From: Macrostomum lignano
Taxonomy: Eukaryota
NCBI GenBank assembly: GCA_002269645.1
Contig: NIVC01003100.1
Location: forward strand, 96,566-119,424
DNA length: 22,859 nt
Direction of reading: 5' to 3'
Below the pieces are notes generated by a model. The model was given only the letters and a program-made list of their open reading frames with translations. It did not search any database and had not been told where the DNA came from. The translations under genes and the position numbers were made by a program. Shown in pieces: positions 1 through 20,106 of this stretch. How positions within the stretch are numbered: the first letter of the stretch is position 1; each line of letters begins with the position of its first letter.

Positions 1-256
1 TACGTTTTGGGGACCGGGTTAGGTGGACCGCAAAAAAACAGTTGGTTTAGTTAGACCTCTTTCTTTGTAGAAAATTTATGAGTTTCAAACTGTTATTTTG
101 GGCTAATTAAACAGAAATTCTCAGAAACAGAAGATAAAAAAGGTTTACGATTCCATTTTATTAAAAAAACCCTGGTTCAAACGAATTTATTTAGCTTTAC
201 TAAAACTATGGGTTAAACTGCATTAGTTACGAAGAAAAACAACGCACACTCAGGGA

Positions 257-664
257 TACAAGAAGTTGAAGCATTTTTAAAACGGCAACAGTTATTAAAA
301 TGGAAATTGTATCAAACAGATATAAGAAATTGAAGCATTTTGAAAAATAAATACCGAATCATTTCGCTTGCCTTAACGCAAAAGATTTAAAACCTAATTA
401 AACTAACTGCAAAGTCATTGAAACTAATTTAAGTCCGGAAGTACATTCTTAAACTACACGTTTAACAAACTTAGGATTGCATTAGTTAAAAAAGTCATAG
501 GGAGTACAAGAAGTTGAAGCATTTTTAAAAGGGCAACAGTTATTAAAATGGAAATTGTATAAAACAGATACAAGAAATTGAAGCATTTTTAAAACGGCGA
601 CAGTTATTAAAATGGAAATTGTATCAAACAGATACAAGAAATTGAAGCATTTTTAAAACGGCGA
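257..664. repeat. 64-bp repeat, two blocks (257-~345, 505-664)
   Basis: Unit TACAAGAA(A/G)TTGAAGCATTTTTAAAACGGC(A/G)ACAGTTATTAAAATGGAAATTGTATCAAACAGA starts at 257, 321, 505, 569, 633. Confidence 0.9.
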
Positions 665-902
665 CTCGCATTCCCCCCCCCCTACACGTTTTTTGCACCC
701 CAGCTTAAAAATTGGCGCCCCTCATACTCAGTTTGGCGTCCCAAACTTGGACCGCCCCCAAAAGCCATCGCTATGCTATCGATAGTGAACAGGTATTTCT
801 TGTCAGCTAAACTAATAGATGCTTTTTAATCTTAGTGTTAGCAATCATAAAGCGTTTAGTCACAAAATGCCGCGTTTTTTCATTTCATTGAAAAACTTCG
901 TT

Positions 903-908
903 TTTATT
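903..908 (-). terminator. Possible polyadenylation signal of the YR gene
   Basis: AATAAA on the minus strand ~150 nt after the YR stop codon; the region is AT-rich so it may be chance. Confidence 0.3.
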
Positions 909-1056
909 TTATGGATCGATCGTGACTGGAGTGCAGGTTCGCGTGCTTTTAGCTCTCCAAGGGCTGCAAAACCAGGTACTTTGCCGTCTTCGATCTTTTC
1001 TATCGCGCGGTTAATTGCCTCATTTTCGTCTTTGTTCCACGCAATGTGCTCCTGAA

Positions 1057-3802
1057 TTAGTTTTTTCTTGACTTCTGAAATGGATTGAAGTAACTGAAAT
1101 CAACTTTGGTTTTTTTCTTCCCCCCAGTTCCCATTTTGTCCTTACCTTCCGAACTAGGAGCGCTTTTGTCCTTCTGTGGGTCCTCTTGTCCGGGTCCTGG
1201 CTCGCTTTTGTCCTTCTGTGGGTCCTCTTGTCCGGGTCCTGGCTCGCTTTTGTCCTTCTGTGGGTCCTCTTGTCCGGGTCCTGGCTCGCTTTTGTCCTTC
1301 TGTGGGTCCTCTTGTCCATGTCCTGGCTCGCTTTTGTTATTAGTCGTTGTTGCTGTCGCACCCTTTGGCTTAGTCGTCCTTCGAATCCGCCTTTCGTTTG
1401 CTCTAGCTTTCTGCACTTTTCTGGTTTTTTTCGTCGGTTGGTAGTCTGAATCGTCTTTGTCTACTTCGCTTTCATATTCATCTGAGTCGAGCACAGCTAA
1501 TCGATTCTTCTTTTTTTCGACTTGCTTGATGGACAGGGGGGCTCCGCGAAAGTCGACAGAACCTTCGTGATAAATTGACTCGTCCTCAAATTCCTTAGCT
1601 TGGATACGAGCTCCATTATTCTCAGGAGGTGCTTGACTCTTTTGGTCACCACGTTTTAATTCTCGAGCCTGTGAGCCTATTGAGGCTTCCACATCACCGG
1701 ATTCGTTCAAATCATCTTTTTTTGCATCTGACTTATCGTCAATGTCATAGTCAATTTCGATGTCGTTAACATCAATCTCTTCGATAGTTTTGCCTTTAAG
1801 CTGGTCGAATCTACCGGCCTCGATAGCCAGAAGTAGCTTGCCTACTTTAGCAAGCTCAATAGTGTTTTCATGCAATCGATAGAAATTATGGTGAACATTA
1901 AGGCTATGTCCAAGATGGTTGGAGAGCCATCCGAGCTCATTTTCTCTCATTTCAAGGATCTGAGAGACAGTGGCAATGTATTTTCGAAGGTTGGTCGAAG
2001 ATAGACGAGCAGGGAACTGGAGCCCTTGACAACTGGAGACAACATTTGTGCGCGCAACGAATGGGGATATATATCCCAAACTTCCACTACTGCAGAATAC
2101 GTAAGGACTTGAAGCGTGGTGTCTTGTGCGAATGAGCTCATCGATAATTTCAGCAATCTCATTCGAAACTAGCAGAGGAACCGGTCGCTGTGCTCTCTTA
2201 CCTCGAACATTAACGATAGTCAACCGGTAAAGCATTTGCTTTTCTAATTCACTTAGCGCAGATAATGTTGTATCATCAACATCTTTGCATGATCTTGCTT
2301 TCTGCCACGCCGAAACTCGCAGCTTGAAGGGCTCAGACGCCCGGCGCTTGTTGAAAATAGACAAACGAATCGCAACATATTCGGCCACCTCTTTCCAGTA
2401 AGAAGGGCTGCTTTTTAGCTTTTCCGTGTCGATGTGGCTTAAATATTCGTTAATGTGCTTCGTGATTAACTGAATGTCGCTAGTTAACGGCAATGTCTGA
2501 CCCTTGTCAATTTTTCTTTCTTTCAAGGACAAAAGTGCAATCGAAGATATTTTACGGCTCCATGATGTTTCATACAGAGTGATGAAGTTGCGTCGCTCCT
2601 GAGCTACTTCGGGCATTTCGCATTTCAGGGCACGTACTAACGACAGTTCAGCAGCCAGCTTCAGAGAAAACCCGCACTTAAGTGCCATCGAAGGAATAGA
2701 AAAAGAATCGCAAATCTGAGCATCTTCTTGGGCCGTAAATTTCGCTACATTTCGAGTCGCCTCAACAACTAAATCAAATGATGATGGCTTCAGCAAATCG
2801 TCAAGACAAGCGCTGGGATCGCCCATAATTTCACGAGCTGACATAAGTAATCTCGACATTTCACGCATTTTCGCAGTTACAATTTTCTTTCCTGTCTTTC
2901 CGGATGTAAAACCTTCATAGGCGTAGTAGCCAAGTTCCATTATAAGCTTGTCTGATTGAGCTACTTTGCTACATGAGTCTACCTTCATTTTATTAATAAG
3001 TTCAATAAATTTGGACGGATATTTCGCCGGAAAGCATGATGCAAGGAGAAGGCAGCGTCCTGCACTGACAGCTTCTGTGCGCCTGTTCAAATCGCTGACA
3101 TTTACGACAAAGCGGCAGCGCTGAACATGCCTGCTTAACTCAGTTTTACGAAAAAATCCAAAACAGTGAATGCACGGCAAATACGAAACTTCATTATCTT
3201 TCATGTCCGAAGAACTTCTTTCGCGACACACAATGATTCCTCCCTCCTTCTCCTGGGTCATAACTTTTATGTTATGTTCGTAATCTCCTCGAAAGCGCAA
3301 GCGATCAAATTCCTGGTCATATTCTGAAAAAAATATGAACAGATAATTATTTTCAGACAAACTAAATACTACTATGAGGACCTACATAAAAAACTTATTT
3401 CAAAAACTTACTATCAGACTTAGGATTAAATGCGAGGGCGCGCTGTACACACATTTCCTTCGAGTGTGCCCGAATAAGATGCCTTCTGATCTTCGAAAAC
3501 ATTTCTCCGCAAAAGAGGCAGCAATGCCTCTTCTTCTCATGCTTAAGTTTCGCTTGGGACGGAACTAAATCATCAGACCAGACTTCCTCCAAATAATAAT
3601 CTTCATCACCATCTTCTTCCTCGAGTTCAGCGTCCTCAGGTAGTATACTCGTATTTGCAATGTCCCTTAAAGCTGAGTGCAACCTTCCACCAAGAATATC
3701 GTCTACTACCGTAAGATTTTTGTCCACAAACGAATCATCATCTACTAAATCAAAAGCAACGTCTATCCTTGCTTTGGTAGCATCGCCGTCTCTATCGCAA
3801 AC
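1057..3802 (-). CDS. Tyrosine recombinase (Crypton-type metazoan family) with N-terminal Zn-binding motifs; exons 3802-3412 and 3323-1057 (885 codons), first exon not adjacent
   Basis: YR catalytic-type motifs IFNKRRASE (R), RGKR (K), STNLRKY (xxxR), NHLGHS (H), NFYR (Y). Cys/His motifs CLFC..RHLIRAH and CIHC..RHVQRC. The 88-nt intron 3411-3324 (GTAAGT..TTTTTCAG) joins the two ORF-track ORFs in frame. Acceptor TTTATTTTTCAG|GTT at 3802. Confidence 0.85.
1161..1335 (-). repeat. 42-bp coding tandem repeat (~4 copies, DKSEPGPGQEDPQK) in the YR C-terminal tail
   Basis: Directly visible; period 42. Confidence 0.95.
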
Positions 3803-3879
3803 CTGAAAAATAAACAGCAAGTTACATAGCTTAGATATACTCATTAGCTCATTTTTCCTGAAAAGTCAATAAGTCAATT

Positions 3880-4055
3880 CTCTGAAGCACTACAACGCGA
3901 TAATCTAAGTCAAAACGTTTAGACACCCTTCATTTAGACAGTGCAGACGTTCTGATCTCATGGTGGACCAGCTCGCTTTCTAAGAATCTGTTCTGATTGC
4001 ATTCCAAGAAACGGAAACATTCCCGCACTAAACTTTCAAGACAGCTCTGAGAGCC
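3880..4055. other. Module B' (diverged B copy directly upstream of YR)
   Basis: 3941-4055 essentially identical to the B modules; 3880-3940 diverged (TTCTCTGAAGCAC versus TTCTCTACAGCAC). Confidence 0.85.
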
Positions 4056-4304
4056 AAAGCCCCAAACAGACTGAGAGAGCTGCTTTAGTTGTGTCTGTAG
4101 GTTAGGTGGACCACCTTCCAAGAGTCAAAGCCCCAAACAGACTGAGAGAGCTGCTTCAGTTGTGTCTGTAGGTTAGGTGGACCACCTTTTAAGAGTCAAA
4201 GCCCCAAACAGACTGAGAGAGCTGCTTCAGTTGTGTCTGTTCTGTAGGTTAGGTGGACCAGCTTCTCTACAGCAATTGAGTTGCAGCTAGCTACTTTGAG
4301 ATCA

Positions 4305-4544
4305 TCAAGCGAAACTCACTTTTCTGGACTCGGTGTCGACGGATTTGCCAGTAGACCGACGATTTTCACCAGGCGATGCGGCCTTCTTCGAGGCTGGAGT
4401 AGCGCCTGCATCCGCGGTAGCGTTGTGCGACTGAGCGCCTTCATCAAGGCGTGATGCAGAGCGCGAACGGCTTCGCGATTTCCGCCCTCTTTTTGAGGCA
4501 CCAGTGCGTTCGATTTGGCGGGAACGAAATTCGACCTCAGGCTC
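4305..4544 (-). CDS. Cassette A1 (alpha type): ATG-less terminal exon, 79 codons, basic RS-rich peptide ending RKVSFA
   Basis: Acceptor TTTTTATTCTCTAACTTCCTAG|GAG; open frame EPEVEFRSRQIERTGASKRGRKSRSRSRSASRLDEGAQ...SPGENRRSTGKSVDTESRKVSFA*. Same frame as the DBF4 C-terminus. Not in the ORF track because it lacks a start codon. Confidence 0.6.
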   Translation of the reverse strand, partial: EPEVEFRSRQIERTGASKRGRKSRSRSRSASRLDEGAQSHNATADAGATPASKKAASPGENRRSTGKSVDTESRKVSFA

Positions 4545-4961
4545 CTAGGAAGTTAGAGAATAAAAAGACAAGTCAAAGTCGGAAGCTTAAATTCAAAACC
4601 GCTGCCGTGTATCCGTGTGACCCTCAAACAGACTGAGAGAGCTGCTTCAGTTGTGTCTGTAGGTTAGGTGGACCACCTTATAAAAGTCAAAGCCCCAAAC
4701 AGACTGAGAGAGCTGCTTCAGTTGTGTCTGTAGGTTAGGTGGACCACCTTCCAAGAGTCAAAGCCCCAAACAGACTGAGAGAGCTGCTTCAGTTGTGTCT
4801 GTAGGTTAGGTGGACCACCTTTTAAGAGTCAAAGCCCCAAACAGACTGAGAGAGCTGCTTCAGTTGATGTCTGTAGGTTAGGTGGACCACCTTTTAAGAG
4901 TCAAAGCCCCAAACAGACTGAGAGAGCTGCTTCAGTTGTGTCTGTAGGTTAGGTGGACCAC

Positions 4962-5140
4962 CTTCTCTACAGCACTACTAGGCGATAATCTGAGTCGGAA
5001 TGCCTTGAGACCATTCATTTACACAGTGCAGACGTTCTGATCTCATGGTGGACCAGCTCGCTTTCTAAGAATCTGTTCTGATTGCATTCCAAGAAACGGA
5101 AACATTCCCGCACTAAACTTTCAAGACAGCTCTGAGAGCC
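4962..5140. other. Module B1 (non-coding or micro-exon module)
   Basis: Begins CTTCTCTACAGCAC; near-identical to 8288-8468, 11602-11782 and 12845-13024. Confidence 0.85.
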
Positions 5141-5815
5141 AAAGCCCCAAACAGACTGAGAGAGCTGCTTCAGTTGTGTCTGTAGGTTAGGTGGACCACC
5201 TTATAAAAGTCAAAGCCCCAAACAGACTGAGAGAGCTGCTTCAGTTGTGTCTGTAGGTTAGGTGGACCACCTTTTAAGAGTCAAAGCCCCAAACAGACTG
5301 AGAGAGCTGCTTCAGTTGTGTCTGTAGGTTAGGTGGACCACCTTATAAAAGTCAAAGCCCCAAACAGACTGAGAGAGCTGCTTCAGTTGTGTCTGTAGGT
5401 TAGGTGGACCACCTTATAAAAGTCAAAGCCCCAAACAGACTGAGAGAGCTGCTTCAGTTGTGTCTGTAGGTTAGGTGGACCACCTTATAAAAGTCAAAGC
5501 CCCAAACAGACTGAGAGAGCTGCTTCAGTTGTGTCTGTAGGTTAGGTGGACCACCTTATAAAAGTCAAAGCCCCAAACAGACTGAGAAAGCTGCTTCAGT
5601 TGTGTCTGTAGGTTAGGTTGACCACCTTTTAAGAGTTAAAGCCCCAAACAGACTGAGAGAGCTGCTTCAGTTGTGTCTGTAGGTTAGGTGGACCACCTTC
5701 CAAGAGTCAAAGCCCCAAACAGACTGAGAGAGCTGCTTCAGTTGCGTCTGTTCTGTAGGTTAGGTGGACCAGCTTCTCTACAGCAATTGAGTTGCAGCTA
5801 GCTACTTTGAGATCA

Positions 5816-6055
5816 TCAAGCGAAACTCACTTTTCTGGACTCGGTGTCGACGTATTTGCGAGTAGACCGACGATTTTCACCAGGCGATGCGGCCTTCTTC
5901 GAGGCTGGAGTAGCGCCTGCATCCGCGGTAGCGTTGTGCGACTGAGCGCCTTCATCAAGGCGTGATGCAGAGCGCGAACGGCTTCGCGATTTCCGCCCTC
6001 TTTTTGAGGCACCAGTGCGTTCGATTTGGCGGGAACGAAATTCGACCTCAGGCTC
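5816..6055 (-). CDS. Cassette A2 (alpha type) terminal exon
   Basis: Near-identical to A1; acceptor and frame intact. Confidence 0.6.
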   Translation of the reverse strand, partial: EPEVEFRSRQIERTGASKRGRKSRSRSRSASRLDEGAQSHNATADAGATPASKKAASPGENRRSTRKYVDTESRKVSFA

Positions 6056-6386
6056 CTAGGAAATTAGAGAATAAAAAGACAAGTCAAAGTCGGAAGCTTA
6101 AATTCAAAACCGCTGCCGTGTATCCGTGTGACCCTCAAACAGACTGAGAGAGCTGCTTCAGTTGTGTCTGTAGGTTAGGTGGACCACCTTTTAAGAGTCA
6201 AAGCCCCAAACAGACTGAGAAAGCTGCTTCAGTTGTTTCTGTAGGTTAGGTGGACCACCTTATAAAAGTCAAAGCCCCAAACAGACTGAGAGAGCTGCTT
6301 CAGTTGTGTCTGTAGTTTAGGTGGACCACCTTTTAAGAACTTCTCTACAGCAATTGAGTTGCATGCAGCTAGCTATTTTGAGATCA

Positions 6387-7430
6387 TTAAACGAAACTCA
6401 CTTTTTTGGACTCGGTGTCGACGTATTTGCGAGCAGACTGACGATTTTCGCCAAGCGATGCGGCTTGGCGTCTATCACCGTCATTTTGCTGAAATATGTT
6501 AGGTAGTGCTTTCGAATCCGGTTTTTTCGTGTCATGATGTGTCATAGGAGCGGTAGCCTTTTGAGTCGCTTCATTTAGGGCGCTGTCTAGCGTCGGAAGA
6601 GTTGAAATGATTTGGTCGATTTCAGTAAAATTTTTTTTATTCGAAACGAAATCTTGGTGCTTTTGGCTTAATGTTATGTGCTGATTAAAGTCGTCGTAGG
6701 CTTCGCGACAGTTTTCACACCGACCTTTCCGTTTTTCTTTGCCGTCAGGCTTTTGACGATTTTTTTCATCGTTATTATTAGCCCTTGGGTTTGCAAAAAT
6801 GTCGACGACATCAATGTTATCTTTGAAGATTGGTCTCAGCAAATGCTGGGCATCCGTAACAACAACGGCCGGTGGGGTCAAATTCCGATCTTCTTCGGCA
6901 AACCTCCCTGAAGAAATAGTTTTCTGGCACAGCTCGTGTTGAGAAACTTGATCGCGAATTCGATCTCGAAATATTGCCGGAGTGTAGACAGGTATTTGCA
7001 GCAAGCGAGCTTTCGTCAAAATATCTTCGAATGTTTTGACAATTCTGCATTGCGAACTCGAAGTTTGCGTAACGGCTCTCTGCTGCATGGTGAAACCCCT
7101 AGAAAACTCCGAAAAAGATTGTTTAGCTTCAATGGAGACAGCGGAATCGTCAGCGATGATTAAATCAACCTGGAAAAGCAAAAAATACGAGCCCATAGCT
7201 ACAAAAAATCTATCAACGTCTCTAATCTGCCCTATTAACAAGCAACAAACAAAAACAACGAATGCATTGCAAAAACTACACACCTCATTTGAAAAAAACG
7301 AAGCAACGCTTCCGCCATAATAGACGACGGCAGATTCCAGCTTCTTTTGTCGCTTTTGACTTTCGCCGTACAGAAAAAAAACTCGCTTCCCTCGAAGAGA
7401 ATCCAATGTAAACTGCTCGACCAAACAGCC
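6387..7430 (-). CDS. DBF4: Compact DBF4-like protein (Cdc7 kinase regulatory subunit); exons 7430-7284 and 7169-6387, 309 codons, no own ATG
   Basis: N/BRCT-like motif LRGKRVFFLY..LESAVVYYGGSVASFFSNE|VDLII, restored by removing a 114-nt GT..CAG intron. M motif LTPPAVVVTDAQHLLRPIFK. C-motif zinc finger KGRCENCREAYDDFNQHITLSQKHQDF..IDQII. Acceptor TTTTATTTTAGTTTCTACAG|GGC. Recognised from memory of DBF4 motifs. Confidence 0.85.
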   Translation of the reverse strand, partial: GCLVEQFTLDSLRGKRVFFLYGESQKRQKKLESAVVYYGGSVASFFSNEVCSFCNAFVVFVCCLLIGQIRDVDRFFVAMGSYFLLFQVDLIIADDSAVSIEAKQSFSEFSRGFTMQQRAVTQTSSSQCRIVKTFEDILTKARLLQIPVYTPAIFRDRIRDQVSQHELCQKTISSGRFAEEDRNLTPPAVVVTDAQHLLRPIFKDNIDVVDIFANPRANNNDEKNRQKPDGKEKRKGRCENCREAYDDFNQHITLSQKHQDFVSNKKNFTEIDQIISTLPTLDSALNEATQKATAPMTHHDTKKPDSKALPNIFQQNDGDRRQAASLGENRQSARKYVDTESKKVSFV

Positions 7431-7924
7431 CTGTAGAAACTAAAATAAAAAAAATTTCTCACATATTACTCCATTACGGAAACGCCTAAACAGTACATAA
7501 GTTTTGACTGTAGGTTAGGTGGACCACCTTCTAAGAGTCAAAGCCCCAAACAGACTGAGAGAGCTGCTTCAGTTGTGTCTGTAGGTTAGGTGGACACCTT
7601 ATAAGAGTCAAAGCCCCAAACAGACTGAGAGAGCTGCTTCAGTTGTGTCTGCAGGTTAGGTGGACCACCTTATAAAAGTCAAAGCCCCAAACAGACTGAG
7701 AGAGCTGCTTCAGTTGTATCTGTAGGTTAGGTGGACCACCTTCCAAGAGTCAAAGCCCCAAACAGACTGAGAAAGCTGCTTCAGATGTGTCTGTAGGTTA
7801 GGTGGACCACCTTCCAAGATTCAAAGCCCCAAACAGACTGAGAGAGCTGCTTCAGTTGTGTCTGTAGGTTAGGTGGACCAGCTTCTCTACAGCAATTGAG
7901 TTGCAGCTAGCTACTTTGAGATCA

Positions 7925-8155
7925 TCAAGCGAAACTCACTTTTCTGGACTCGGTGTCGACGGATTTGCCAGTAGACCGACGATTTTCACCAGGCGATGCG
8001 GCCTTCTTCGAGGCTGGAGTAGCGCCTGCATCCGCGGTAGCGTTGTGCGACTGAGCGCCTTCATCAAGGCGTGATGCAGACGCAGAGCGCGATTTCAACT
8101 TTTTCGAAGCCTCAGACTGGTCGAGCTCAGGAGAACGAAATTCGACCTCGGGCTC
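7925..8155 (-). CDS. Cassette A3 (beta type) terminal exon, 76 codons
   Basis: Different middle segment (EPEVEFRSPELDQSEASKKLKSRSASASR) but the same acceptor, frame and tail. Confidence 0.6.
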   Translation of the reverse strand, partial: EPEVEFRSPELDQSEASKKLKSRSASASRLDEGAQSHNATADAGATPASKKAASPGENRRSTGKSVDTESRKVSFA

Positions 8156-8287
8156 CTAGGAAGTTAGAGAATAAAAAGACAAGTCAACGTCGGAAGCTTA
8201 AATTCAAAACCGCTGCAGTGTATCCGTGTGACCCTCAAACAGACTGAGAGAGCTGCTTCAGTTGTGTCTGTAGGTTAGGTGGACCAC

Positions 8288-8468
8288 CTTCTCTACAGCA
8301 CTACTAGGCGATAATCTGAGTCGGAATGCCTAGAGACCATTCATTTACACAGTGCAGACATTCTGATCTCATGATGGACCAGCTCGCTTTCTAAGAATCT
8401 GTTCTGATTGCATTCCAAGAAACGGAAACATTCCCGCACTAAACTTTCAAGACAGCTCTGACAGCCAA
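8288..8468. other. Module B2
   Basis: Copy of B1. Confidence 0.85.
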
Positions 8469-8578
8469 GGCCCCAAACAGACTGAGAGAGCTGCTTCAGT
8501 TGTGTCTGTAGGTTAGGTGGACCACCTTTTAAGAGCTTCTCTACAGCAATTGAGTTGCAGCTAGCTACTTTGAGATCA

Positions 8579-8809
8579 TCAAGCGAAACTCACTTTTCTG
8601 GACTCGGTGTCGACGTATTTGCGAGTAGACCGACGATTTTCACCAGGCGATGCGGCCTTCTTCGAGGCTGGAGTAGCGCCTGCATCCGCGGTAGCGTTGT
8701 GCAACTGAGAGCCTTCATCAAGGCGTGATGCAGACGCAGAGCGCGATTTCAACTTTTTCGAAGCCTCAGACTGGTCGAGCTCAGGAGAACGAAATTCGAC
8801 CTCGGGCTC
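8579..8809 (-). CDS. Cassette A4 (beta type) terminal exon
   Basis: Frame and acceptor intact. Confidence 0.6.
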   Translation of the reverse strand, partial: EPEVEFRSPELDQSEASKKLKSRSASASRLDEGSQLHNATADAGATPASKKAASPGENRRSTRKYVDTESRKVSFA

Positions 8810-9420
8810 CTAGGAAGTTAGAGAATAAAAAGACAAGTCAACGTCGGAAGCTTAAATTCAAAACCGCTGCCGTGTATCCGTGTGACCCTCAAACAGACTG
8901 AGAGAGCTGCTTCAGTTGTGTCTGTAGGTTAGGTGGACCACCTTCCAAGAGTCAAAGCCCCAAACAGACTGAGAGAGCTGCTTCAGTTGTGTCTGTAGGT
9001 TAGGTGGACCACCTTCCAAGAGTCAAAGCCCCAAACAGACTGAGAGAGCTGCTTTAGTTGTGTCTGTAGGTTAGGTGGACCACCTTTTAAGAGTCAAAGC
9101 CCCAAACAGACTGAGAGAGCTGCTTCAGTTGTGTCTGTAGGTTAGGTGGACCACCGTATAAAAGTCAAAGCCCCAAACAGACTGAGAAAGCTGCTTCAGT
9201 TGTGTCTGTAGGTTAGGTGGACCACCTTCCAAGAGTCAAAGCCCCAAACAGACTGAGAAAGCTGCTTCAGTTGTGTCTGTAGGTTAGGTGGACCACCTTA
9301 TAAGAGTCAAAGCCCCAAACAGACTGAGAGAGCTGCTTCAGTTGTGTCTGTAGGTTAGGTGGACCACCTTTTAAGAGCTTCTCTACAGCAATTGAGTTGC
9401 AGCTAGCTACTTTGAGATCA

Positions 9421-9651
9421 TCAAGCGAAACTCACTTTTCTGGACTCGGTGTCGACGTATTTGCGAGTAGACCGACGATTTTCACCAGGCGATGCGGCCT
9501 TCTTCGAGGCTGGAGTAGCGCCTGCATCCGCGGTAGCGTTGTGCAACTGAGAGCCTTCATCAAGGCGTGATGCAGACGCAGAGCGCGATTTCGACTTTTT
9601 CGAAGCGTCAGACTGGTCGAGCTCAGGAGAATGAAATTCGAACTCAGGCTC
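9421..9651 (-). CDS. Cassette A5 (beta type) terminal exon
   Basis: Frame and acceptor intact despite several substitutions. Confidence 0.6.
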   Translation of the reverse strand, partial: EPEFEFHSPELDQSDASKKSKSRSASASRLDEGSQLHNATADAGATPASKKAASPGENRRSTRKYVDTESRKVSFA

Positions 9652-9922
9652 CTAGGATGTTAGAGAATAAAAAGACAAGTCAACGTCGGAAGCTTAAATT
9701 CAAAACCGCTGCCGTGTATCCGTGTGACTAGGGATGTCGATTCCCCGGGGAATATTCTTATCGGGGACCCGGGGAATTTACTGTCATTCCCGGGGACCCC
9801 GGGGAAAATTAAAAATAAGTTAAAAACGGCGAATAACTTTGGCTTAGATCTTAAATGGCATTTTAAACTTTGATTTTAGCTTTAGACTACATGTTCAAGG
9901 CGCAAGGGTAAAAACTAAACAA

Positions 9923-10260
9923 TCTCTACCTATAAAAATGAAAACTCTGTCTGCGTGTGTGTCTGTGTACAAATTACTTTGCTATGGACTCCCAAGTCCC
10001 AAACCGCTCAACCAAATTACGATAACTTTTGCACCCGCCCTAAATTTACTACGGAGAATGTCTTAGGCTACCTTAAAATTTCCTAAACTCAAGTCTTCCT
10101 ACCTAAAAGTGCAAAAACTGCTCAAAATGCGCGATTTTTTACTAAATCCTCCATAGCGCCGCTCCACTTCTACCGATCCTTTCAACCGTGTAAAATTTCA
10201 AGTCTCAAAGTTAATCCTGAAAGGCGCTGTGCACTTTTAAAATTAACTGTTTTTTCAGCG
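9923..10260 (+). mobile_element. Possible non-autonomous Helitron-like fragment nested in the hAT; right end not defined
   Basis: A|TCTCTACCTATAAAAATGAAAAC followed by a (TG/TCTG) tract and CCGCTCAACCAAATTACGATAACTTTTGCAC resembles animal Helitron 5' ends from memory. No 3' hairpin/CTRR end found. Confidence 0.35.
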
Positions 10261-10944
10261 AGGCAACCACCCCAACCTCCGCCCGCCTGCCTCTCTTTCC
10301 CGATCTGGGCAAAGGAGTGTAAATAGGTTTAAAATGACTAACTTTCGGCTGTCATAAGCTTGCTCCACGTGAAGCGATTGACTTCAAATTTGACGCAATT
10401 CTTTATTGACTCATTCTCTATCTAAATGTAAAGTCTCAACTCTGTATCTCAATCAGGACAGAAACTGTAAGCATGTGAAGTTTGTCTGCTTTTTCTGTTG
10501 TTTGTGCCGCTCACTCATTCCACCAGCCCAGACCCCCAGACGAAGGGTCAGGCGATTGGGCTTAATGTACATAGCGAATGTACAGTGTTTTGGAATAACT
10601 TTTTAATAGCCTTCTCTGTACCCGCGAGTGGAGAGGCGCAGAGAGGAGAGACAGTTTAGCCAGAGATTCAAAACACTGTCCTCTGTATAGACAAGTCTTC
10701 AGGCTCAGTTATAACAGTAGATGGCAAATCAAGAGTCAAGACAACGTGGGATGGTTTGTAAAAATAGCGAAAAATTAATGAATAACTGATTACAATGCAA
10801 TCCTACTAAATTAGTTAGTTACAGCATGAAGCTTTTAACATTAAAATTCGCATAAGATCACTTTAAAATTTAAATGGCTCCTAAGAAATGCCTATATCCC
10901 TTGGTTGTAGTAGGGATGTCGACCCCGGGGAGCTTGTGTTTATT

Positions 10945-11064
10945 TAAAACTGTATTTGACAACGTGGCATCATCAAATCGTGCGTGCACCTTTGTCAGAA
11001 GGAGTCCAGACTGTGGTGTGGAGGCGGAAAATGCATGCTCAGCAGCTACGCTCGTGGGAGGATA
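10945..11064 (-). pseudogene. Remnant of hAT transposase C-terminal dimerisation domain
   Basis: YPPTSVAAEHAFSAS..GLLLTKVHARFDDATLSNTVL resembles the hAT PxTSxxxERxFS..GLxxTKxRxRL motif. Confidence 0.75.
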
Positions 11065-11601
11065 ATTAATGAATGAGACCGTTTTTATAATCAAAATTTT
11101 TATTTCTAGCAGACATTGTCCTTGTCTAATAGGGAGCATTTTGTTATTGTATGACACCCCCATGCGTCCGCAGGACGCAGCGCTGTGCCTGCGTCAAATT
11201 CCGTCAAGCCGTCAACGCAGACCAACACAGTAGTCAGTAAAGCTTCTTTTTCCTGACGGGTTTTTAGGTGAAATTTGCTTGATTGAAGGACTCGTAGTGA
11301 AAAAACATTCAAACGTGTGTTGCGTTTGAAATTTTACATTGAGATAAGCAGTTATGCGGTAAGAAAAGCATAGACAGAGTTTCAATCAGCTCTCTGTAAA
11401 TTATTTTCTTATTTTAATGGCAAAAATTAGGTTAAAAATGCATTTTTCTCCCGGGGTCCCCGGTTCAATTCCCCGGGGAATATTCCCCGACAAGCTCCCC
11501 GGGGCCCCGGGGAGCACTCCCCGGGGTCGACATCCCTACGTGTGACCCTCAAACAGACTGAGAGAGCTGCTCCAGTTGTGTTTGTAGGTTAGGTGGACCA
11601 C

Positions 11602-11782
11602 CTTCTCTACAGCACTACTAGGCGATAATCTGAGTCGGAATGCCTAGAGACCATTCATTTACACAGTGCAGACATTCTGATCTCATGGTGGACCAGCTCG
11701 CTTTCTAAGAATCTGTTCTGATTGCATTCCAAGAAACGGAAACATTCCCGCACTAAACTTTCAAGACAGCTCTGAGAGCCAA
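11602..11782. other. Module B3
   Basis: Copy of B1. Confidence 0.85.
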
Positions 11783-12003
11783 GGCCCCAAACAGACTGAG
11801 AAAGCTGCTTCAGTTGTGTCTGTAGGTTAGGTGGACCACCTTCCAAGATTCAAAGCCCCAAACAGACTGAGAGAGCTGCTTCAGTTGTGTCTGTAGGTTA
11901 GGTGGACCACCTTATAAAAGTCAAAGCCCCAAACAGACTGAGAAAGCTGCTTCAGTTGTGTCTGTAGGTTAGGTGGACCACCTTCCAAGATTCAAAGCCC
12001 CAA

Positions 12004-12301
12004 CATACATGCGCAACCTCCAAAATTCGGTCGGCCGTGCGACTTAGTTTTAACAAAAATGCGACGTAGTTTTTGGCCAAAAATGCGACTTACATGGAAA
12101 GAAACCCTAAAGCAAAATTAACGCAACTTCGGGTAAACGGCAGGAGTAACTATGACTGTCTTATTGAGCCAAAATGCCTCGTCAGCTACTTAGTACTACT
12201 ACTTCGGTGTTTTTTCGGGTGGGCATATTTGCGACTTCCTTGGTTGGCCGCCAAATCGGTCGGCCGGATCGGCCGACTCGGCCAACTGTTGCGCATGTAT
12301 G
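12004..12301. mobile_element. 298-bp MITE, probably hAT-type, inserted in one 71-bp repeat
   Basis: 14-bp TIR CATACATGCGCAAC / GTTGCGCATGTATG; 8-bp target duplication AGCCCCAA at 11996-12003 and 12302-12309. Confidence 0.93.
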
Positions 12302-12472
12302 AGCCCCAAACAGACTGAGAGAGCTGCTTCAGATGTGTCTGTAGGTTAGGTGGACCACCTTCCAAGATTCAAAGCCCCAAACAGACTGAGAGAGCTGCTT
12401 CAGTTGTGTCTGTAGGTTAGGTGGACCAGCTTCTCTACAGCAATTGAGTTGCAGCTAGCTACTTTGAGATCA

Positions 12473-12712
12473 TCAAGCGAAACTCACTTTTCTGGACTCG
12501 GTGTCGACGGATTTGCCAGTAGACCGACGATTTTCACCAGGCGATGCGGCCTTCTTCGAGGCTGGAGTAGCGCCTGCATCCGCGGTAGCGTTGTGCGACT
12601 GAGCGCCTTCATCAAGGCGTGATGCAGAGCGCGAACGGCTTCGCGATTTCCGCCCTCTTTTTGAGGCACCAGTGCGTTCGATTTGGCGGGAACGAAATTC
12701 GACCTCAGGCTC
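12473..12712 (-). CDS. Cassette A6 (alpha type) terminal exon
   Basis: Near-identical to A1. Confidence 0.6.
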   Translation of the reverse strand, partial: EPEVEFRSRQIERTGASKRGRKSRSRSRSASRLDEGAQSHNATADAGATPASKKAASPGENRRSTGKSVDTESRKVSFA

Positions 12713-12844
12713 CTAGGAAGTTAGAGAATAAAAAGACAAGTCAAAGTCGGAAGCTTAAATTCAAAACCGCTGCAGTGTATCCGTGTGACCCTCAAACAGA
12801 CTGAGAGAGCTGCTTCAGTTGTGTTTGTAGGTTAGGTGGACCAC

Positions 12845-13024
12845 CTTCTCTACAGCACTACTAGGCGATAATCTGAGTCGGAATGCCTAGAGGCCATTCA
12901 TTTACACAGTGCAGACATTCTGATCTCATGGTGGACCAGCTCGCTTTCTAAGAATCTGTTCTGATTGCATTCCAAGAAACGTAAGCATTCCTGCACTAAA
13001 CTTTCAAGACAGCTCTGTGAGCCA
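12845..13024. other. Module B4
   Basis: Slightly more diverged copy of B1. Confidence 0.85.
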
Positions 13025-13104
13025 AAGCCCCAAACAGACTGAGAGAGCTGCTTCAGTTGTGTCTGTAGGTTAGATAGGCCTTGCAATTAGCTATTTTGAG
13101 ATCA

Positions 13105-13278
13105 TCAAACGAAACTCACTTTTCTGGACTCGGTGTCGATGGTTTTGCGAGCAGACTGTCGGTTTTCACCAGGCGATGCGGCCTTCTTCGATTTTGCAGT
13201 GGCTTTTTGCGTCGCAGTTTTTTTAGGTTTTACCTTAGGCTTAGGCTTGGCGTCCTTTTTGTTTTTTTTTCGGGTCAT
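13105..13278 (-). CDS. Module H: short Lys/Ala/Pro-rich ORF (57 aa) with the shared tail
   Basis: MTRKKNKKDAKPKPKVKPKKTATQKATAKSKKAASPGENRQSARKTIDTESRKVSFV*; a candidate acceptor at 13307 is out of frame as assembled. Confidence 0.45.
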   Translation of the reverse strand: MTRKKNKKDAKPKPKVKPKKTATQKATAKSKKAASPGENRQSARKTIDTESRKVSFV

Positions 13279-13466
13279 TGTATCTTGCTTGGCACAATAA
13301 ATTTATCTATAGATGAAACTTAGAGTATGGAAAATAATGTTAGACCTAATAAGTGTGAATAGAATCAGTTCTAATTTATAAAACTGTCTGTGTGTGGTCT
13401 AACTACGCCATGGTTTACGGGGACCACCCGCTTAGACATTATATATCCCTCTCTCTACAGTCTTAC

Positions 13467-13511
13467 CTTCAGAACCCTTGCGGGTTTCCTATTGGCTGAG
13501 GTCGGTCCCAT
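13467..13511 (-). CDS. Putative shared first coding exon (MGPTSANRKPARVLK)
   Basis: Good start context CAACG-ATG-G, exactly 15 codons, then a strong phase-0 donor AAG|GTAAGA. TATAAT-like sequence ~40 nt upstream (13551-13556). Confidence 0.5.
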
Positions 13512-14378
13512 CGTTGGGGTTGATCTTTCCTCCTAAGTGTTAACCAGCCAATTATAGAAAGGGAGGTCTGTCTGTCTGTCTGTTCCAACCCTATACTCCT
13601 GCACATGTGTTTACGTGGACCAAACAGACAGTTAGTGTTAGGCTGACTGTTAATGCGTTCTTAGTTTTACTGGGACCGCAATCAAGTCGATCTTTTGCTA
13701 GAGATTCAGAGACCCAATTTCTAGCTAAAAGGCCCTTCTTAATTGCGTCCTCTTGATTTTGCATGTACATGTATGAATGGCCCTTTTCAATTAGGTAAAT
13801 TGCATCTTCAACTTTGCACTTAAAAGGCTGCAGCTTAGGATCTTCTTCTTCAAGATATCCCATAGTGTTTGCGATAGAGTTGGCAAGCACTTAATTTATG
13901 AAGTTGCTATTAATTTTTTCTTGTGTAATGGTAGAGCCTCAGAAATTTTCATTTACACAGTGTGGCTATCAAGGACCACTGGGAGTTCTTGAGAAGTCAT
14001 TGAAGAATATTGTTTAAGCTTCACTTAAATATCTTTCTTGTCTCGGAGTCTTTATCGCTTGATCTGGTTAGTAAATTGGATTTCTTTACATTGGTGTCTT
14101 ACTCTGTGAGTCTCTGCTCAGAGTACGATACCGGAATTGCTGGAACTGAGCTAATTAAATGGAGTTTAAAGTTTACTATATAAAATTCATTTCGCATACG
14201 AGGTTGTCAGAATTTTAAATTAACCTGCGTACCTACTTGAATGTCAAAGAATTTTAACGCATATTGTTTTAAGGCCAGTGGCGGTCATAATATGATGTTA
14301 ACATAGCCATTTGTTCGTAAGGTAATGATATGTAAAAAATTCAGTTTTGCATCGAATCTATGCTTAATAACTGCTATA

Positions 14379-14720
14379 CACAAACAGACACAAACAGACA
14401 CAAACAGACACAAACAGACGATTTTCGAAAAATTTTCTGAAATTTTTCGGTTTACGTGGACCAGACTCGCTCGGTTTAGGTAGACCAGGCTGGAGGTCCA
14501 GCTAAACTGAAATGCGAATAACTTTGGAAAAAACCATGCTAGACATTCCAAAATTGCTAGAGCCCTTCTTGACCCGCCTGACATTAATTTGAGATCCTCA
14601 TCAACGTCTTAACCCCACCAGAGACAAAATTATTTGGTGGTCCACCTAAGTGGTCTACCTACACCGGGTGGTCCAGCTAACGAGGCTACTGAACTTCCAA
14701 AAAGTCCACGTAAACACACA
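14379..14720. repeat. Cluster of repeat-derived motifs: 4x CAAACAGACA plus forward and inverted TTA(C/G)(G/C)T(G/A)GACCA boxes
   Basis: Forward boxes at ~14450-14490; inverted boxes at ~14497, 14636-14650, 14652-14662, 14669-14681, 14704-14718. Confidence 0.75.
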
Positions 14721-14734
14721 GACAGTAGAACAGG

Positions 14735-14735
14735 C

Positions 14736-14788
<53 letters not shown>

Positions 14789-14789
14789 G
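14735..14789. repeat. (GACA)n microsatellite
   Basis: Directly visible. Confidence 0.97.
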
Positions 14790-14831
14790 GCAATGATGGC
14801 AAACATGCCACACAGACAGACAGCACCCCAG

Positions 14832-15212
14832 AAACCCTGGCCCCGCACCAGATACCTGGCCTTAAATGGCTCGCTAATCCTGGCTGTGCTGGAGCCGGTC
14901 AGCCAGAAGCGCACCCTGCCATCAGCCATCGTTATCGTCCGCGGCCCCTTCGGCCGCCAGGTCTGGCAGGCGGAGATGCGCGACGCGCCCAGACAGCAGC
15001 GGCCCCCGGCAGCGCCGCAGTCGGCCAGGCGGCCGCCACCCGATCCGTCTCTGCTGCCCTATTGGTGCTACACTGAGGGGCGCCGGGCGCCGCCGTATTT
15101 TCCTGCCGAGCCGCCTGGCCTGCCGGCTGTGCGCGCCGACGCCTCGGTGCCGACGCTGGCTTCGGTGACGCCAAATAGCGCCGAGGTGCTGCGGCTGATG
15201 GCGCAGGCGCGC
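14832..15212 (+). CDS. RALGAPB: RalGAP subunit beta-like host gene, internal exon; both splice boundaries uncertain
   Basis: RYLALNGSLILAVLEP..PSAIVIVRGPFGRQVW..ADASVPTL resembles RALGAPB RYFVLDNSVILAMLEQ..PSVTVLVRGMSGRLAW..ADLSIPDL as remembered; GC-rich. Confidence 0.75.
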
Positions 15213-15304
15213 GTGCCAAAGCGGCTACCCTGTGAGCGATTGATTTCTATTCGATTCCAGCATGCCTGAGTAGCTTCAATAGAAAGAGCATTGAGTTTTC
15301 AGTG

Positions 15305-15905
15305 TTTCCTATGGAAACTACTGTGCTTCCTATGGAAACTACTGTGCTTCCTATGGAAACTACTGTGCTTCCTATGGAAACTACTGTGCTTCCTATGGAA
15401 ACTACTGTGCTTCCTATGGAAACTACTGTGCTTCCTATGGAAACTACTGTGCTTCCTATGGAAACTACTGTGCTTCCTATGGAAACTACTGTGCTTCCTA
15501 TGGAAACTACTGTGCTTCCTATGGAAACTACTGTGCTTCCTATGGAAACTACTGTGCTTCCTATGGAAACTACTGTGCTTCCTATGGAAACTACTGTGCT
15601 TCCTATGGAAACTACTGTGCTTCCTATGGAAACTACTGTGCTTCCTATGGAAACTACTGTGCTTCCTATGGAAACTACTGTGCTTCCTATGGAAACTACT
15701 GTGCTTCCTATGGAAACTACTGTGCTTCCTATGGAAACTACTGTGCTTCCTATGGAAACTACTGTGCTTCCTATGGAAACTACTGTGCTTCCTATGGAAA
15801 CTATTGTGCTTCCTATGGAAACTACTGTACTTCCTATGGAAACTACTGTACTTCCTACGGAAACTACTGTGCTTCCTATGGAAACTGATGTGCTTCCTAT
15901 GGAAA
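15305..15905. repeat. 21-bp intronic minisatellite (CTATGGAAACTACTGTGCTTC), ~28 copies
   Basis: Directly visible. Confidence 0.97.
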
Positions 15906-15968
15906 AACCCCTGCATCCTATGGCCTGGATTTGGGCCATTTCTAGTCACGTGACGATTGGTTAATCAG

Positions 15969-16505: not shown

Positions 16506-16552
16506 GTGAGCTGCTCTGGCGTGCGGCCTTTGTTTGATCTTTATCTATGCAG

Positions 16553-17350: not shown

Positions 17351-17372
17351 TTAACCAGTCCCAATCCCTCAG

Positions 17373-19347: not shown

Positions 19348-19348
<1 letters not shown>

Positions 19349-19429
<81 letters not shown>

Positions 19430-20026: not shown

Positions 20027-20106
20027 CAGGCAGTAACTAATGCTTCTCTATTTTTTATGTTGGTTGGTCAGCAATGCTCGGATAGTGACACGGCCGCCTT
20101 ACTCAC

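What the first reader, a model, noticed from the sequence alone, without database searches (positions are those of the whole stretch)
3802..13511. One ATG exon with a phase-0 donor and eight ATG-less payloads that all begin at phase-0 acceptors
Seen: YR (TTTTTCAG|GTT, 3802), DBF4 (TTTCTACAG|GGC, 7430) and all six A copies (CTAACTTCCTAG|GAG) begin at a polypyrimidine/AG acceptor exactly on a codon boundary and have no start codon there. At the 5' end of the array is ATG + 14 codons + AAG|GTAAGA (13511-13467), also phase 0. Inference: a common N-terminus (MGPTSANRKPARVLK) is spliced to alternative terminal exons, giving ~94/91-aa A proteins, a ~324-aa DBF4 and a ~900-aa recombinase. The choice could be made by splicing or by DNA deletion between repeats; the recombinase is the most distal option.
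Basis: partly seen in the sequence, partly recalled or inferred. Interest (0 to 1): 0.88.

Follow-up and report, generated by a model that had tools for sequence, protein, structure and literature searches.

The report
Transposon recombinase gene with repeated exons
A flatworm jumping gene appears to encode one long recombinase whose front part comes from a tandem, copy-number-variable array of interchangeable in-frame exons, rather than from alternative end-exons sharing a tiny start exon as first proposed.

Summary
The window is Macrostomum lignano DNA and the gene lies on the minus strand.

Three points change the picture:
- Every A copy and the DBF4 block ends in one conserved 22-24-codon tail.
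- A better ATG exon (E1, 13278-13120) carries the same tail and donor.
- No poly(A) signal follows any cassette.

The payloads are therefore symmetric internal exons. Spliced in series, the 12 exons give an uninterrupted 1,726-aa ORF: basic E1, four A, a Dbf4-like module, two A, then a zinc-finger tyrosine recombinase. Public gene predictions chain the exons the same way.

Its pattern appears in 16% of shuffles.

A 50%-identical paralogue occurs at three unrelated genomic sites, each bounded by (TGTC)n. It has the same design, with 2, 9 and about 25 tandem exon copies. This marks a Crypton-like transposon.

A 13-bp motif heads the intronic minisatellites and clusters at the element ends.

No transcript data were available. 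SL trans-splicing, whose leader ends in AUG, remains a rival start mechanism.

The parts
14714..14789 (-). (CTGT)n, equivalent to (TGTC)n, on the gene strand: inferred 5' boundary of the element
   Evidence: Tandem repeat finder. In the paralogue copies, homology between copies starts and ends in (TGTC)n. The same microsatellite-then-GTGTTTRCGTRGAC junction aligns between the window and L001.
14440..14713 (-). 5' terminal motif cluster. Inverted copies of the 13-bp motif start at 14703, 14652, 14639 and 14495; direct copies start at 14486 and 14462.
   Evidence: Alignable with the 5' end of the paralogue element (L001 8880-9150), although no other non-coding similarity exists.
14474..14507 (.). 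lox/FRT-like arrangement: GTTTAGCTGGACC - 8-nt spacer TCCAGCCT - GGTCTACCTAAAC
   Evidence: The arms are conserved in the paralogue (GTTTACAAGGACC-TTTAACAC-AGTCCACCCAAAC) while the spacer differs. A role as a recombination site is inferred, not shown.
13467..13511 (-). Probably promoter sequence or a short uORF, not the shared first exon.
   Evidence: It contains CAGCCAATAGG (CCAAT at 13495) and lies upstream of TATATAA (13445). The pattern appears in 16% of shuffles. Unspliced, it stops after 18 codons (sequence).
13413..13425 (-). Promoter-proximal motif copy GGTCCCCGTAAAC, 147 nt upstream of the E1 ATG
   Evidence: The paralogue has GGTCAACGTAAAC 124 nt upstream of its ATG (L001 9877).
13120..13278 (-). 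E1: ATG exon of 53 codons, lysine-rich, ending in the shared tail ...GENRQSARKTIDTESRK | GTGAGT (phase 0)
   Evidence: The E1 tail joined to an A exon is seen in the public model P0004.
12488..12712 (-). A1 cassette exon (225 nt, phase 0-0, 'long' variant)
9436..9651 (-). A2 cassette exon (216 nt, phase 0-0, 'short' variant)
8594..8809 (-). A3 cassette exon (216 nt, phase 0-0)
7940..8155 (-). A4 cassette exon (216 nt, phase 0-0; mosaic of a short-type 5' half and a long-type 3' half)
7284..7430 (-). Dbf4-like module, exon 1 (BRCT-like motif N region), phase 0-0
   Evidence: (BRCT 20.1 bits, just under the 21.3-bit cut-off)
6402..7169 (-). Dbf4-like module, exon 2 (zf-DBF), ending in the shared tail + GTGAGT, phase 0-0
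   Evidence: Pfam zf-DBF E=4.4e-16. Yeast and human Dbf4 motif C, E=2e-6..
5831..6055 (-). A5 cassette exon (225 nt, phase 0-0)
   Evidence: Spliced directly after DBF4 in the public models P0002 and P0005.
4320..4544 (-). A6 cassette exon (225 nt, phase 0-0; identical to A1)
3803..13119 (-). The eight cassette introns. Each is built from I5 (58 nt after the donor) + n copies of a 71-bp minisatellite R71 (sometimes with a 176-bp B unit) + I3 (86 nt before A acceptors).
   Evidence: Module map; tandem repeats. R71 starts with the motif GGTCCACCTAACC, with 46 copies on the gene strand and 1 on the other.
3412..3802 (-). YR exon 1 (acidic region + first C2H2-like finger). Phase-0 acceptor, phase-1 donor.
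   Evidence: The intron position and phase are conserved in the paralogue.
1146..3323 (-). YR exon 2: second zinc finger and the tyrosine-recombinase core (R-E-K-T..R-H-Y), then a 14-aa x4 acidic repeat
860..1074 (-). YR exon 3: C-terminal tail homologous to the paralogue's C-terminus. Stop at 862-860; ATTAAA at 830.
17..57 (-). 3' terminal motif copies (GGTCTAACTAAAC, GGTCCACCTAACC), cut by the window edge
   Evidence: The paralogue has the equivalent cluster 0.8-1.0 kb after its stop, just before the right-hand (TGTC)n.

Best explanation
Window 1-14713 (minus strand) is nearly all of a roughly 14.7-kb Crypton-like tyrosine-recombinase (YR) transposon of Macrostomum lignano. It carries one long gene.

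Proposed expression (inferred, not shown):
- Transcription starts downstream of the CCAAT and TATA boxes (13495, 13445).
- Translation starts at the E1 ATG (13278).
- Ordinary cis-splicing joins E1 to A1-A4, to the two Dbf4-like exons, to A5-A6 and to three YR exons.
- With every exon included, the product has 1,726 aa: a lysine-rich head, S/R/K-rich A repeats, a BRCT-like plus zf-DBF module, two zinc fingers, the YR catalytic core and a C-terminal tail.

Why the array tolerates change:
- E1, every A exon and both Dbf4-like exons end in phase 0, and all but Dbf4-like exon 1 end with the same tail and donor.
- Every downstream acceptor is phase 0.
- Exon skipping, or gain and loss of cassettes, therefore never breaks the frame, and the same tail peptide always precedes whichever exon follows.

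Origin of the array: it arose, and changes copy number, by unequal recombination or slippage in the 71-bp intronic minisatellite.

Shown here: the exon anatomy, the phases, the open reading frame, the homology relations, the copy-number differences and the mobility of the paralogue. Inferred: the promoter, the actual splice pattern and expression.
For: - Eight identical phase-0 GTGAGT donors sit at the end of a conserved tail. They are 8 of the 9 GTGAGT on the strand.
- E1 shares its last 72 nt with the A exons at 90% identity.
- The 12-exon concatenation is one ORF of 1,726 aa. Its C-terminus matches the paralogue's.
- No poly(A) signal follows any A tail. ATTAAA lies 30 nt after the final stop.
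- The long and short A variants differ by an in-frame 9-nt indel, with pN/pS about 0.5 (pS 0.22, pN 0.12).
- Public M. lignano gene models join DBF4 to A5, and the E1 tail to A, A, A, then DBF4 and on to YR.
- The donors fit the species' cis motif GT[G/A]AG.
- The 50%-identical paralogue (L001, L004, L005) has the same design. Its 387-nt phase-0/0 exons have identical acceptors and donors and are separated by an 83-85-bp minisatellite. Its NCBI (GenBank) protein model P0155 reads three modules in series.
- The YR intron position and phase are conserved between the two genes.
Against: - No RNA evidence of any kind was available.
- The public models are predictions: partial, and one with frame errors.
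- No Mlig_3_7 protein for this gene turned up in the protein clusters, so expression is unproven.
- A acceptors end in TAG, not the preferred CAG.
- An in-frame ATG at 3844 could start a YR-only protein.
- The paralogue's annotated proteins hold fewer modules than the genome copies do (1-3 against 3-26). Either skipping is extensive or transcript assemblies collapsed the repeats.
- Long tandem arrays can be mis-assembled.
Confidence: 0.6

Rival explanations
1. Spliced-leader trans-splicing supplies the start codon. The M. lignano SL ends in ...TTGCATG. Trans-splicing it to a phase-0 acceptor (YR 3802, DBF4 7430 or an A exon) would create an AUG-initiated ORF without any upstream cis exon, giving N-terminally shorter proteins. 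This could coexist with the cis-spliced long form.
For: - The SL sequence ends in ATG, and 30% of the species' genes are trans-spliced.
- All flatworm SLs carry a 3' AUG that can serve as initiator, and internal SL acceptor sites are reported.
- The YR (TTTCAG) and DBF4 (CTACAG) acceptors fit the trans-acceptor motif [T/C]TNCAG.
- All the acceptors are exactly phase 0.
- In the paralogue each module exon begins ATG right at the acceptor.
Against: - Trans-splicing is favoured when no cis donor lies upstream. Here a strong donor precedes every acceptor.
- A acceptors are TAG.
- Phase 0 is equally required by the cis model.
- No SL-containing reads could be examined.
Confidence: 0.15
2. A 15-codon exon (13511-13467) is the common first exon and is spliced to alternative terminal exons. 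This would give separate small A proteins, a 324-aa DBF4 protein and a 900-aa recombinase.
For: The ATG, the open 15 codons and an AAG|GTAAGA donor are present, and the phase is compatible.
Against: - The pattern occurs in 16% of shuffles.
- It overlaps a CCAAT box upstream of a TATA box.
- It shares no homology with the array, whereas E1 does.
- The cassettes end in conserved donors and lack poly(A) signals.
- No conserved coding similarity was found in the 5' region of the paralogue.
Confidence: 0.04
3. DNA-level cassette choice. The element's own recombinase acts on the 13-bp motif that heads every intronic minisatellite unit. It deletes, amplifies or reorders exon cassettes, in the manner of an integron or shufflon. 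On this view copy number differs between copies for that reason.
For: - The motif GGTC-NN-SS-TAA-[AC]-C is strictly on the gene strand in the arrays: 46/1 in the window and 19/0, 49/0 and 187/0 in the paralogue loci, against 0.05 expected.
- The same motif forms conserved clusters at both element ends, including a 13-8-13 inverted pair.
- The two genes' minisatellites share little beyond this motif.
- Cassette numbers vary: 2, 9 and about 25 in the paralogue, and 3+(4 or more) against 4+2 in this gene.
Against: - Unequal homologous recombination or slippage in a minisatellite explains the copy-number variation without any enzyme.
- Motif counts in the arrays are inflated by amplification.
- Array units carry single direct half-sites, not inverted pairs with a spacer.
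- Binding of the protein to the motif is untested.
- Long higher-order duplications of 770-860 bp look like ordinary segmental duplication.
Confidence: 0.08
4. The cassette array is evolutionary debris. Only the YR part is expressed, from the ATG at 3844 as in the UniProt model, and the A and DBF4 exons are non-functional duplicated pseudo-exons.
For: - UniProt A0A1I8J1L2 starts at 3844.
- No transcript-based protein for this gene was found.
- Two transposon insertions sit in the A1-A2 intron.
Against: - All eight cassettes keep open frames, splice sites and phase.
- pN/pS is below 1 and the indel is in-frame.
- The Dbf4-like module keeps an intact zf-DBF.
- The MSISKLCNLLFIFQ extension is just the translated polypyrimidine tract.
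- The insertions are intronic.
- The paralogue's N-terminal modules are part of its annotated protein.
Confidence: 0.1

Closest known systems
Crypton DNA transposons (tyrosine-recombinase elements; Goodwin et al. 2003; Kojima & Jurka 2011, PMC3212892)
   Same: - One intron-containing gene encodes a YR with no reverse transcriptase.
- There are no TIRs or LTRs.
- Short direct repeats lie at both ends and are thought to be the crossover substrate. Here these are TGTC units of a microsatellite, seen on both sides of the three paralogue copies and on the 5' side in the window.
- Copies sit at unrelated sites (definition).
   Different: - No DUF3504, GCR1_C or Phage_integrase Pfam hit for this protein.
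- Two N-terminal C2H2-like fingers and a large conserved region precede the catalytic domain.
- N-terminal accessory modules are present: Dbf4-like here, and Chromo or SET in relatives.
- An internal exon-plus-minisatellite array of variable copy number.
- Multi-copy 13-bp motif clusters at both ends.
- I found no published description of this family.
Tandem exon duplication and cassette-exon arrays in animal genes (textbook knowledge; for example the Dscam exon clusters)
   Same: Adjacent homologous exons have conserved splice sites and symmetric phase, so inclusion or skipping keeps the frame.
   Different: - The copies are nearly identical (84-100%), so little protein diversity is gained.
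- They are embedded in a minisatellite.
- Copy number differs several-fold between element copies.
- No docking or selector RNA structure was detected. The R71 fold has z = 0.08.
Flatworm spliced-leader trans-splicing with the SL 3' AUG as initiator (Cheng et al. 2006, cited in PMC12582326; M. lignano SL in PMC8629364)
   Same: ATG-less ORFs begin exactly at phase-0 acceptors, and two of the acceptors fit the trans-acceptor motif.
   Different: Each acceptor has a strong cis donor upstream, which is the situation that normally favours cis-splicing. No SL reads were available.
Bacterial integrons and shufflons (mechanistic analogy only)
   Same: A tyrosine recombinase gene lies next to an array of short coding cassettes, each flanked by a repeated sequence element.
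   Different: - This is a eukaryote, and the cassettes are exons joined by splicing.
- The repeats are single-orientation half-site-like motifs inside minisatellites.
- No evidence shows that the recombinase acts on them.
Dbf4/ASK, the regulatory subunit of Cdc7 kinase
   Same: A BRCT-like N region is followed by a DBF4-type zinc finger (motif C), in the same order as in Dbf4.
   Different: - Only 305 aa.
- Motif M was not detected.
- The BRCT score is just under the Pfam cut-off.
- It is an internal module of a transposon protein, flanked by the array's tail and acceptor.

Membership tests
Crypton (YR DNA transposon) | Encodes a tyrosine recombinase with the catalytic R...(H)xxR...H/W...Y set | tested here: met
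   R327, E330, K375, T443-x-x-R446, H472 and Y481 (numbering of window:1330-3321:-) are invariant or nearly so across 10-25 family members, and all are present in the window protein. One of 25 members hits Pfam Phage_integrase at E=1e-3. From my own knowledge of XerD, the spacing R446-H472-Y481 (26, 9) resembles it. The usual His before the second Arg is Thr.
Crypton (YR DNA transposon) | Catalytic domain has the tyrosine-recombinase fold | tested here: inconclusive
   AF2 models reached pLDDT 70 and 74. The Foldseek top PDB hit was the XerA recombinase both times, but at E=0.89 and 0.16. Sequence and profile searches of the PDB found no recombinase.
Crypton (YR DNA transposon) | No reverse transcriptase, RNase H or methyltransferase (this separates it from DIRS, Ngaro and PAT) | tested here: met
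   No other long ORF lies in window 1-14713 apart from the gene's own exons and a hAT remnant. The paralogue element holds only the one gene.
Crypton (YR DNA transposon) | Short (4-6 bp) direct repeats at both termini, with no TIRs or LTRs | tested here: met
   The paralogue copies are homologous exactly from a left (TGTC)n to a right (TGTC)n. In the window only the 5' (CTGT)n at 14714-14789 is visible, because the 3' end runs off the window.
Crypton (YR DNA transposon) | Several copies at non-homologous genomic sites | tested here: met
   For the paralogue, three copies are 97-99% identical and their flanks are unrelated. For the window's own element there are only protein-level signs of at least 2-3 loci (P0001 n=2, P0004, and P0002 against P0005). 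Its flanks are unknown.
Crypton (YR DNA transposon) | YR groups with described Crypton YRs / DUF3504 | tested here: not met
   No DUF3504 (or GCR1_C) Pfam hit at E<=0.1 for the window protein, or at E<=0.01 for any of the 25 relatives. No phylogeny with reference Cryptons could be built. It is therefore best called Crypton-like.
Cassette-exon array within one gene | Each unit has a canonical acceptor and donor, symmetric phase and an open frame | tested here: met
   The full concatenation is open for 1,726 codons.
Cassette-exon array within one gene | Exon-exon junctions observed in transcripts | not testable with these tools
   Only gene predictions were available. No RNA-seq or cDNA could be reached.
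SL trans-spliced ORF using the SL AUG | Acceptor fits the trans-acceptor motif and is in phase with the SL AUG | tested here: met
   YR TTTCAG and DBF4 CTACAG fit [T/C]TNCAG and are phase 0. A acceptors (CCTAG) do not fit.
SL trans-spliced ORF using the SL AUG | No cis donor upstream (an outron), and SL-bearing reads at the site | tested here: not met
   A strong cis donor lies upstream of every acceptor. SL reads are not testable here.
Integron/shufflon-like recombination cassette array | Each cassette is bounded by a complete recombination site (inverted binding arms around a spacer) on which the adjacent recombinase acts | tested here: not met
   The array units carry one direct copy of the 13-bp motif each. 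The only 13-8-13 inverted pair is in the 5' terminal cluster. Recombinase activity is not testable here.
Dbf4 | Motifs N (BRCT-like), M and C (DBF4-type zinc finger) | tested here: inconclusive
   Motif C is met: zf-DBF E=4.4e-16, and yeast Dbf4 E=2e-6. Motif N is borderline, with BRCT at 20.1 bits against a 21.3-bit cut-off. Motif M was not detected.

The most novel reading that the evidence does not exclude
The 13-bp motif that heads every intronic minisatellite unit is the binding or recombination site of the element's own zinc-finger tyrosine recombinase. The same motif also forms the conserved clusters at both element ends. On this reading the transposon excises, amplifies and reshuffles its own N-terminal exon cassettes at the DNA level. 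That would be a eukaryotic, intron-embedded analogue of an integron or shufflon, and it would explain the 2, 9 and about 25 copy states.
Probability: 0.07. Interest if true: 0.9.

Novelty: new variant of a known kind. Interest (0 to 1): 0.55.

Why it matters
Cryptons are the least understood class of eukaryotic DNA transposons. Their ends, target sites and recombination sites are mostly undefined. These loci offer several things that can be tested directly:
- clear element boundaries inside a (TGTC)n microsatellite;
- a candidate 13-bp protein-binding motif at both ends, including a lox-like pair;
- a large, metazoan-wide, unnamed family of zinc-finger YR proteins (5,291 cluster representatives) that repeatedly acquired chromatin- or replication-linked N-terminal modules (Chromo, SET, and here Dbf4-like);
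- a clean natural example of a frame-neutral exon array whose copy number varies more than ten-fold between copies in one genome.

There is also a practical use. The analysis shows how the public gene models at these loci are wrong: truncated starts, frame-shifted chains and a fused neighbouring gene.

Tried and rejected
- C/D snoRNA idea. TGATGA lies just after each donor and CTGA in R71. Rfam at E<=1 found no snoRNA or other relevant family, so I dropped it.
- Selector or docking RNA structure in the minisatellite. R71 folds no better than shuffles (z=0.08), and I5+R71 gives z=1.34.
- Fold confirmation of the recombinase. Two AF2 models and two Foldseek/PDB searches gave XerA as top hit, but not significantly. 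Three PDB sequence or profile searches found nothing relevant.
- DNA of other copies of this exact gene. No contig is on record for P0001 or P0002.
- The word-indexed protein search missed even the 50%-identical paralogue. The exhaustive search was needed.
- Upstream ORF 13591-13890 as a possible extra exon or second gene. It has no Pfam hit and no conserved coding similarity in the paralogue's 5' region.
- An SL RNA gene in the window: absent.
- A literature name for the family. Searches for Crypton with flatworm, for CryptonV, and for Crypton with SET or chromodomain gave no description of it.
- Promoter alignment between the two genes. Only CCAAT and the motif recur, with different spacing.

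Full report
ORGANISM AND STRAND
The recombinase ORF is 100% identical to UniRef A0A1I8J1L2 of Macrostomum lignano. Everything relevant reads on the minus strand. Coordinates are + strand.

1. OBSERVATION
- TTTTTCAG|GTT at 3802.
- TTTCTACAG|GGC at 7430, with an in-frame TAG four codons upstream.
- Six A copies starting ...CCTAG|GAG at 12712, 9651, 8809, 8155, 6055 and 4544. The preceding codon is TAG, and no A exon holds an ATG.
- ATG + 14 codons + AAG|GTAAGA at 13511-13467.

Two qualifications apply.
- The YR exon has an in-frame ATG at 3844, which the UniProt model uses.
- The six A acceptors are copies of one sequence.

An 'ATG, at least 5 codons, phase-0 GTRAG' pattern turns up in 16% of shuffles of the upstream 820 nt.

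2. WHAT WAS MISSED
- Each A copy and the DBF4 block ends in the same 22-24-codon tail (KKAASPGENRRST[RG]K[YS]VDTESRK). A GTGAGT follows it exactly on a codon boundary.
- Eight of the nine GTGAGT hexamers on this strand of the whole window are these donors. They match the species' cis-donor motif GT[G/A]AG.
- A 53-codon ATG exon, E1 (13278-13120), ends in the same tail and donor. It is 90% identical to the A exons over 72 nt.
- The A exons (225 or 216 nt) and both DBF4 exons are phase 0-0.
- The introns are modular. Each has 58 nt after the donor, then n copies of a 71-bp minisatellite (R71), sometimes a 176-bp unit, then 86 nt before the A acceptors.
- No AATAAA or ATTAAA follows any A tail. 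The well-placed signal is ATTAAA at 830, just after the final stop at 862-860.
- Joined in series, the 12 exons give one ORF of 1,726 aa.
- The long and short A variants differ by an in-frame 9-nt indel. Synonymous change exceeds non-synonymous change (pS 0.22, pN 0.12).

3. INDEPENDENT GENE MODELS
- UniRef A0A1I8HXN8 and A0A1I8FWK5 splice DBF4 exon 1, exon 2 and A5 at exactly these sites.
- A0A1I8JFG5, from another locus, chains the E1 tail, A, A, A, DBF4 and, after frame errors, several A exons, the YR and a fused neighbouring gene.
- That locus has three A exons before DBF4 and at least four after it. The window has four and two. Copy number therefore varies.
- These are predictions, not transcripts.

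- It contains a CCAAT box (13495) and lies upstream of TATATAA (13445).
- It has no homology link to the array.
- Unspliced, it is an 18-codon uORF.
- I read it as promoter sequence. This is an inference.

5. THE PROTEIN
- The DBF4 block has zf-DBF (E=4e-16), a borderline BRCT match, and matches Dbf4 motif C in the PDB.
- The YR part has no Pfam hit.
- An exhaustive search finds 5,291 cluster representatives (811 at E<=1e-30). Named members come from fish, echinoderms, corals, beetles and nemerteans.
- R327, E330, K375, T443xxR446, H472 and Y481 are invariant or nearly so, and all are present here.
- The fold test was inconclusive. XerA was the top hit twice but was not significant.
- Relatives carry SET or Chromo N-termini.

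6. THE PARALOGUE
- PAA76011 (50% identity; Chromo + repeats + ZnF-YR) was recovered with DNA at three loci of GCA_002269645.1.
- It has the same design. Its 387-nt phase-0/0 exons have identical acceptors (TGTGCAG|ATGGGC) and donors (GAATCG|GTGAGC). An 83-85-bp minisatellite separates them.
- Free exon copies number 2, 9 and about 25.
- One NCBI (GenBank) protein model for this gene, P0155, reads three modules in series.
- The three copies are 97-99% identical from a left (TGTC)n to a right (TGTC)n. Their flanks are unrelated. The element is therefore mobile, with Crypton-style short direct repeats at its ends (definition).
- The window shows the same 5' junction, (CTGT)n at 14714-14789 followed by an alignable terminal block. 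Its 3' end lies just beyond position 1.

7. A SHARED MOTIF
- GGTC-NN-SS-TAA-[AC]-C heads both minisatellites.
- It is strictly on the gene strand: 46/1 in the window and 19/0, 49/0 and 187/0 in the paralogue loci, against 0.05 expected.
- Ten non-array copies (up to 2 mismatches) lie inside the element and none in the 8 kb of flank, against 0.3 expected.
- The 5' cluster includes a 13-8-13 inverted pair. Its arms are conserved in the paralogue but its spacer is not.
- Function is untested.

8. MECHANISM AND RIVALS
- Best reading (0.6): one cis-spliced gene with frame-neutral cassettes, whose number drifts by recombination in the minisatellite.
- Main rival or complement (0.15): SL trans-splicing, because the M. 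lignano leader ends in AUG.
- Recombinase-driven cassette shuffling is possible but unsupported (0.08).
- A dead cassette array with a YR-only protein from the ATG at 3844 is rated 0.1.

9. VERDICT
The exon observations are real. The 'shared mini-exon plus alternative terminal exons' reading is largely wrong. What is there is a Crypton-like element with an unusual exon array of variable copy number and a captured Dbf4-like module. I rate it a new variant of a known kind, of moderate interest.

Noticed in passing
window 9729-11538 (TSD copies 11546-11539 and 9728-9721): A hAT-like non-autonomous insertion sits in the A1-A2 intron. It has TIR TAGGGATGTCGACCCCGGGG, an 8-bp TSD GTCACACG, an internal extra TIR copy near 10910-10930, and an ORF remnant (10870-11163) that by eye resembles a hAT dimerisation domain; no domain search was run on it. 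It is 77-81% similar to L001 24827-25862.
   Followed up: partly
window 12004-12301 (TSD copies 12309-12302 and 12003-11996): A 298-bp MITE with TIR CATACATGCGCAAC and 8-bp TSD TTGGGGCT is inserted inside an R71 unit. It carries a stretch resembling conserved 28S rRNA (12085-12196, Rfam LSU E=0.58, weak).
   Followed up: no
window 1161-1337: A 42-bp x4.2 tandem repeat inside YR exon 2 encodes KSEPGPGQEDPQKD x4, a second in-frame coding repeat in the same gene.
   Followed up: no
window 14790-22859: The flank outside the element is almost entirely satellites: 21-bp x29 (15302-15905), 40-bp x18.5 (16610-17349), 36/76-bp (18050-18920), (CTGA)169 (19350-20026), 26-bp x61 (20464-22056) and 21-bp x39 (22056-22856). 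It also holds a GC-rich (55-57%) block at 14500-17500 containing a 201-aa ORF (15957-16562, +) with no Pfam hit.
   Followed up: partly
L005 10001-46224 (NIVC01001364.1): This paralogue copy has a second copy of the chromodomain first exon at 16052, in the middle of its array (4 modules, then chromo exon 1 again, then about 21 modules). That implies a larger internal duplication or an assembly join. The annotated 1,184-aa protein skips nearly all of the modules.
   Followed up: partly
window 860-1074 and public models P0001 / P0004: Both UniProt models end or splice away after ...IEKIEDGK. The open frame actually continues (VPGFAALGELKAREPALQSRSIHKIKTKFFNEMKKRGIL*) and matches the paralogue's C-terminus. 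P0004 is in addition fused to a neighbouring gene that I judged TBC-like by eye, without a domain search.
   Followed up: yes
window 13621, 14462 and L001 9877: The variant GGTCCACGTAAAC / GGTCAACGTAAAC (CG core) occurs only in the 5' non-coding region of both elements. The minisatellite copies have CC or GC cores. This may mark a distinct class of site.
   Followed up: no
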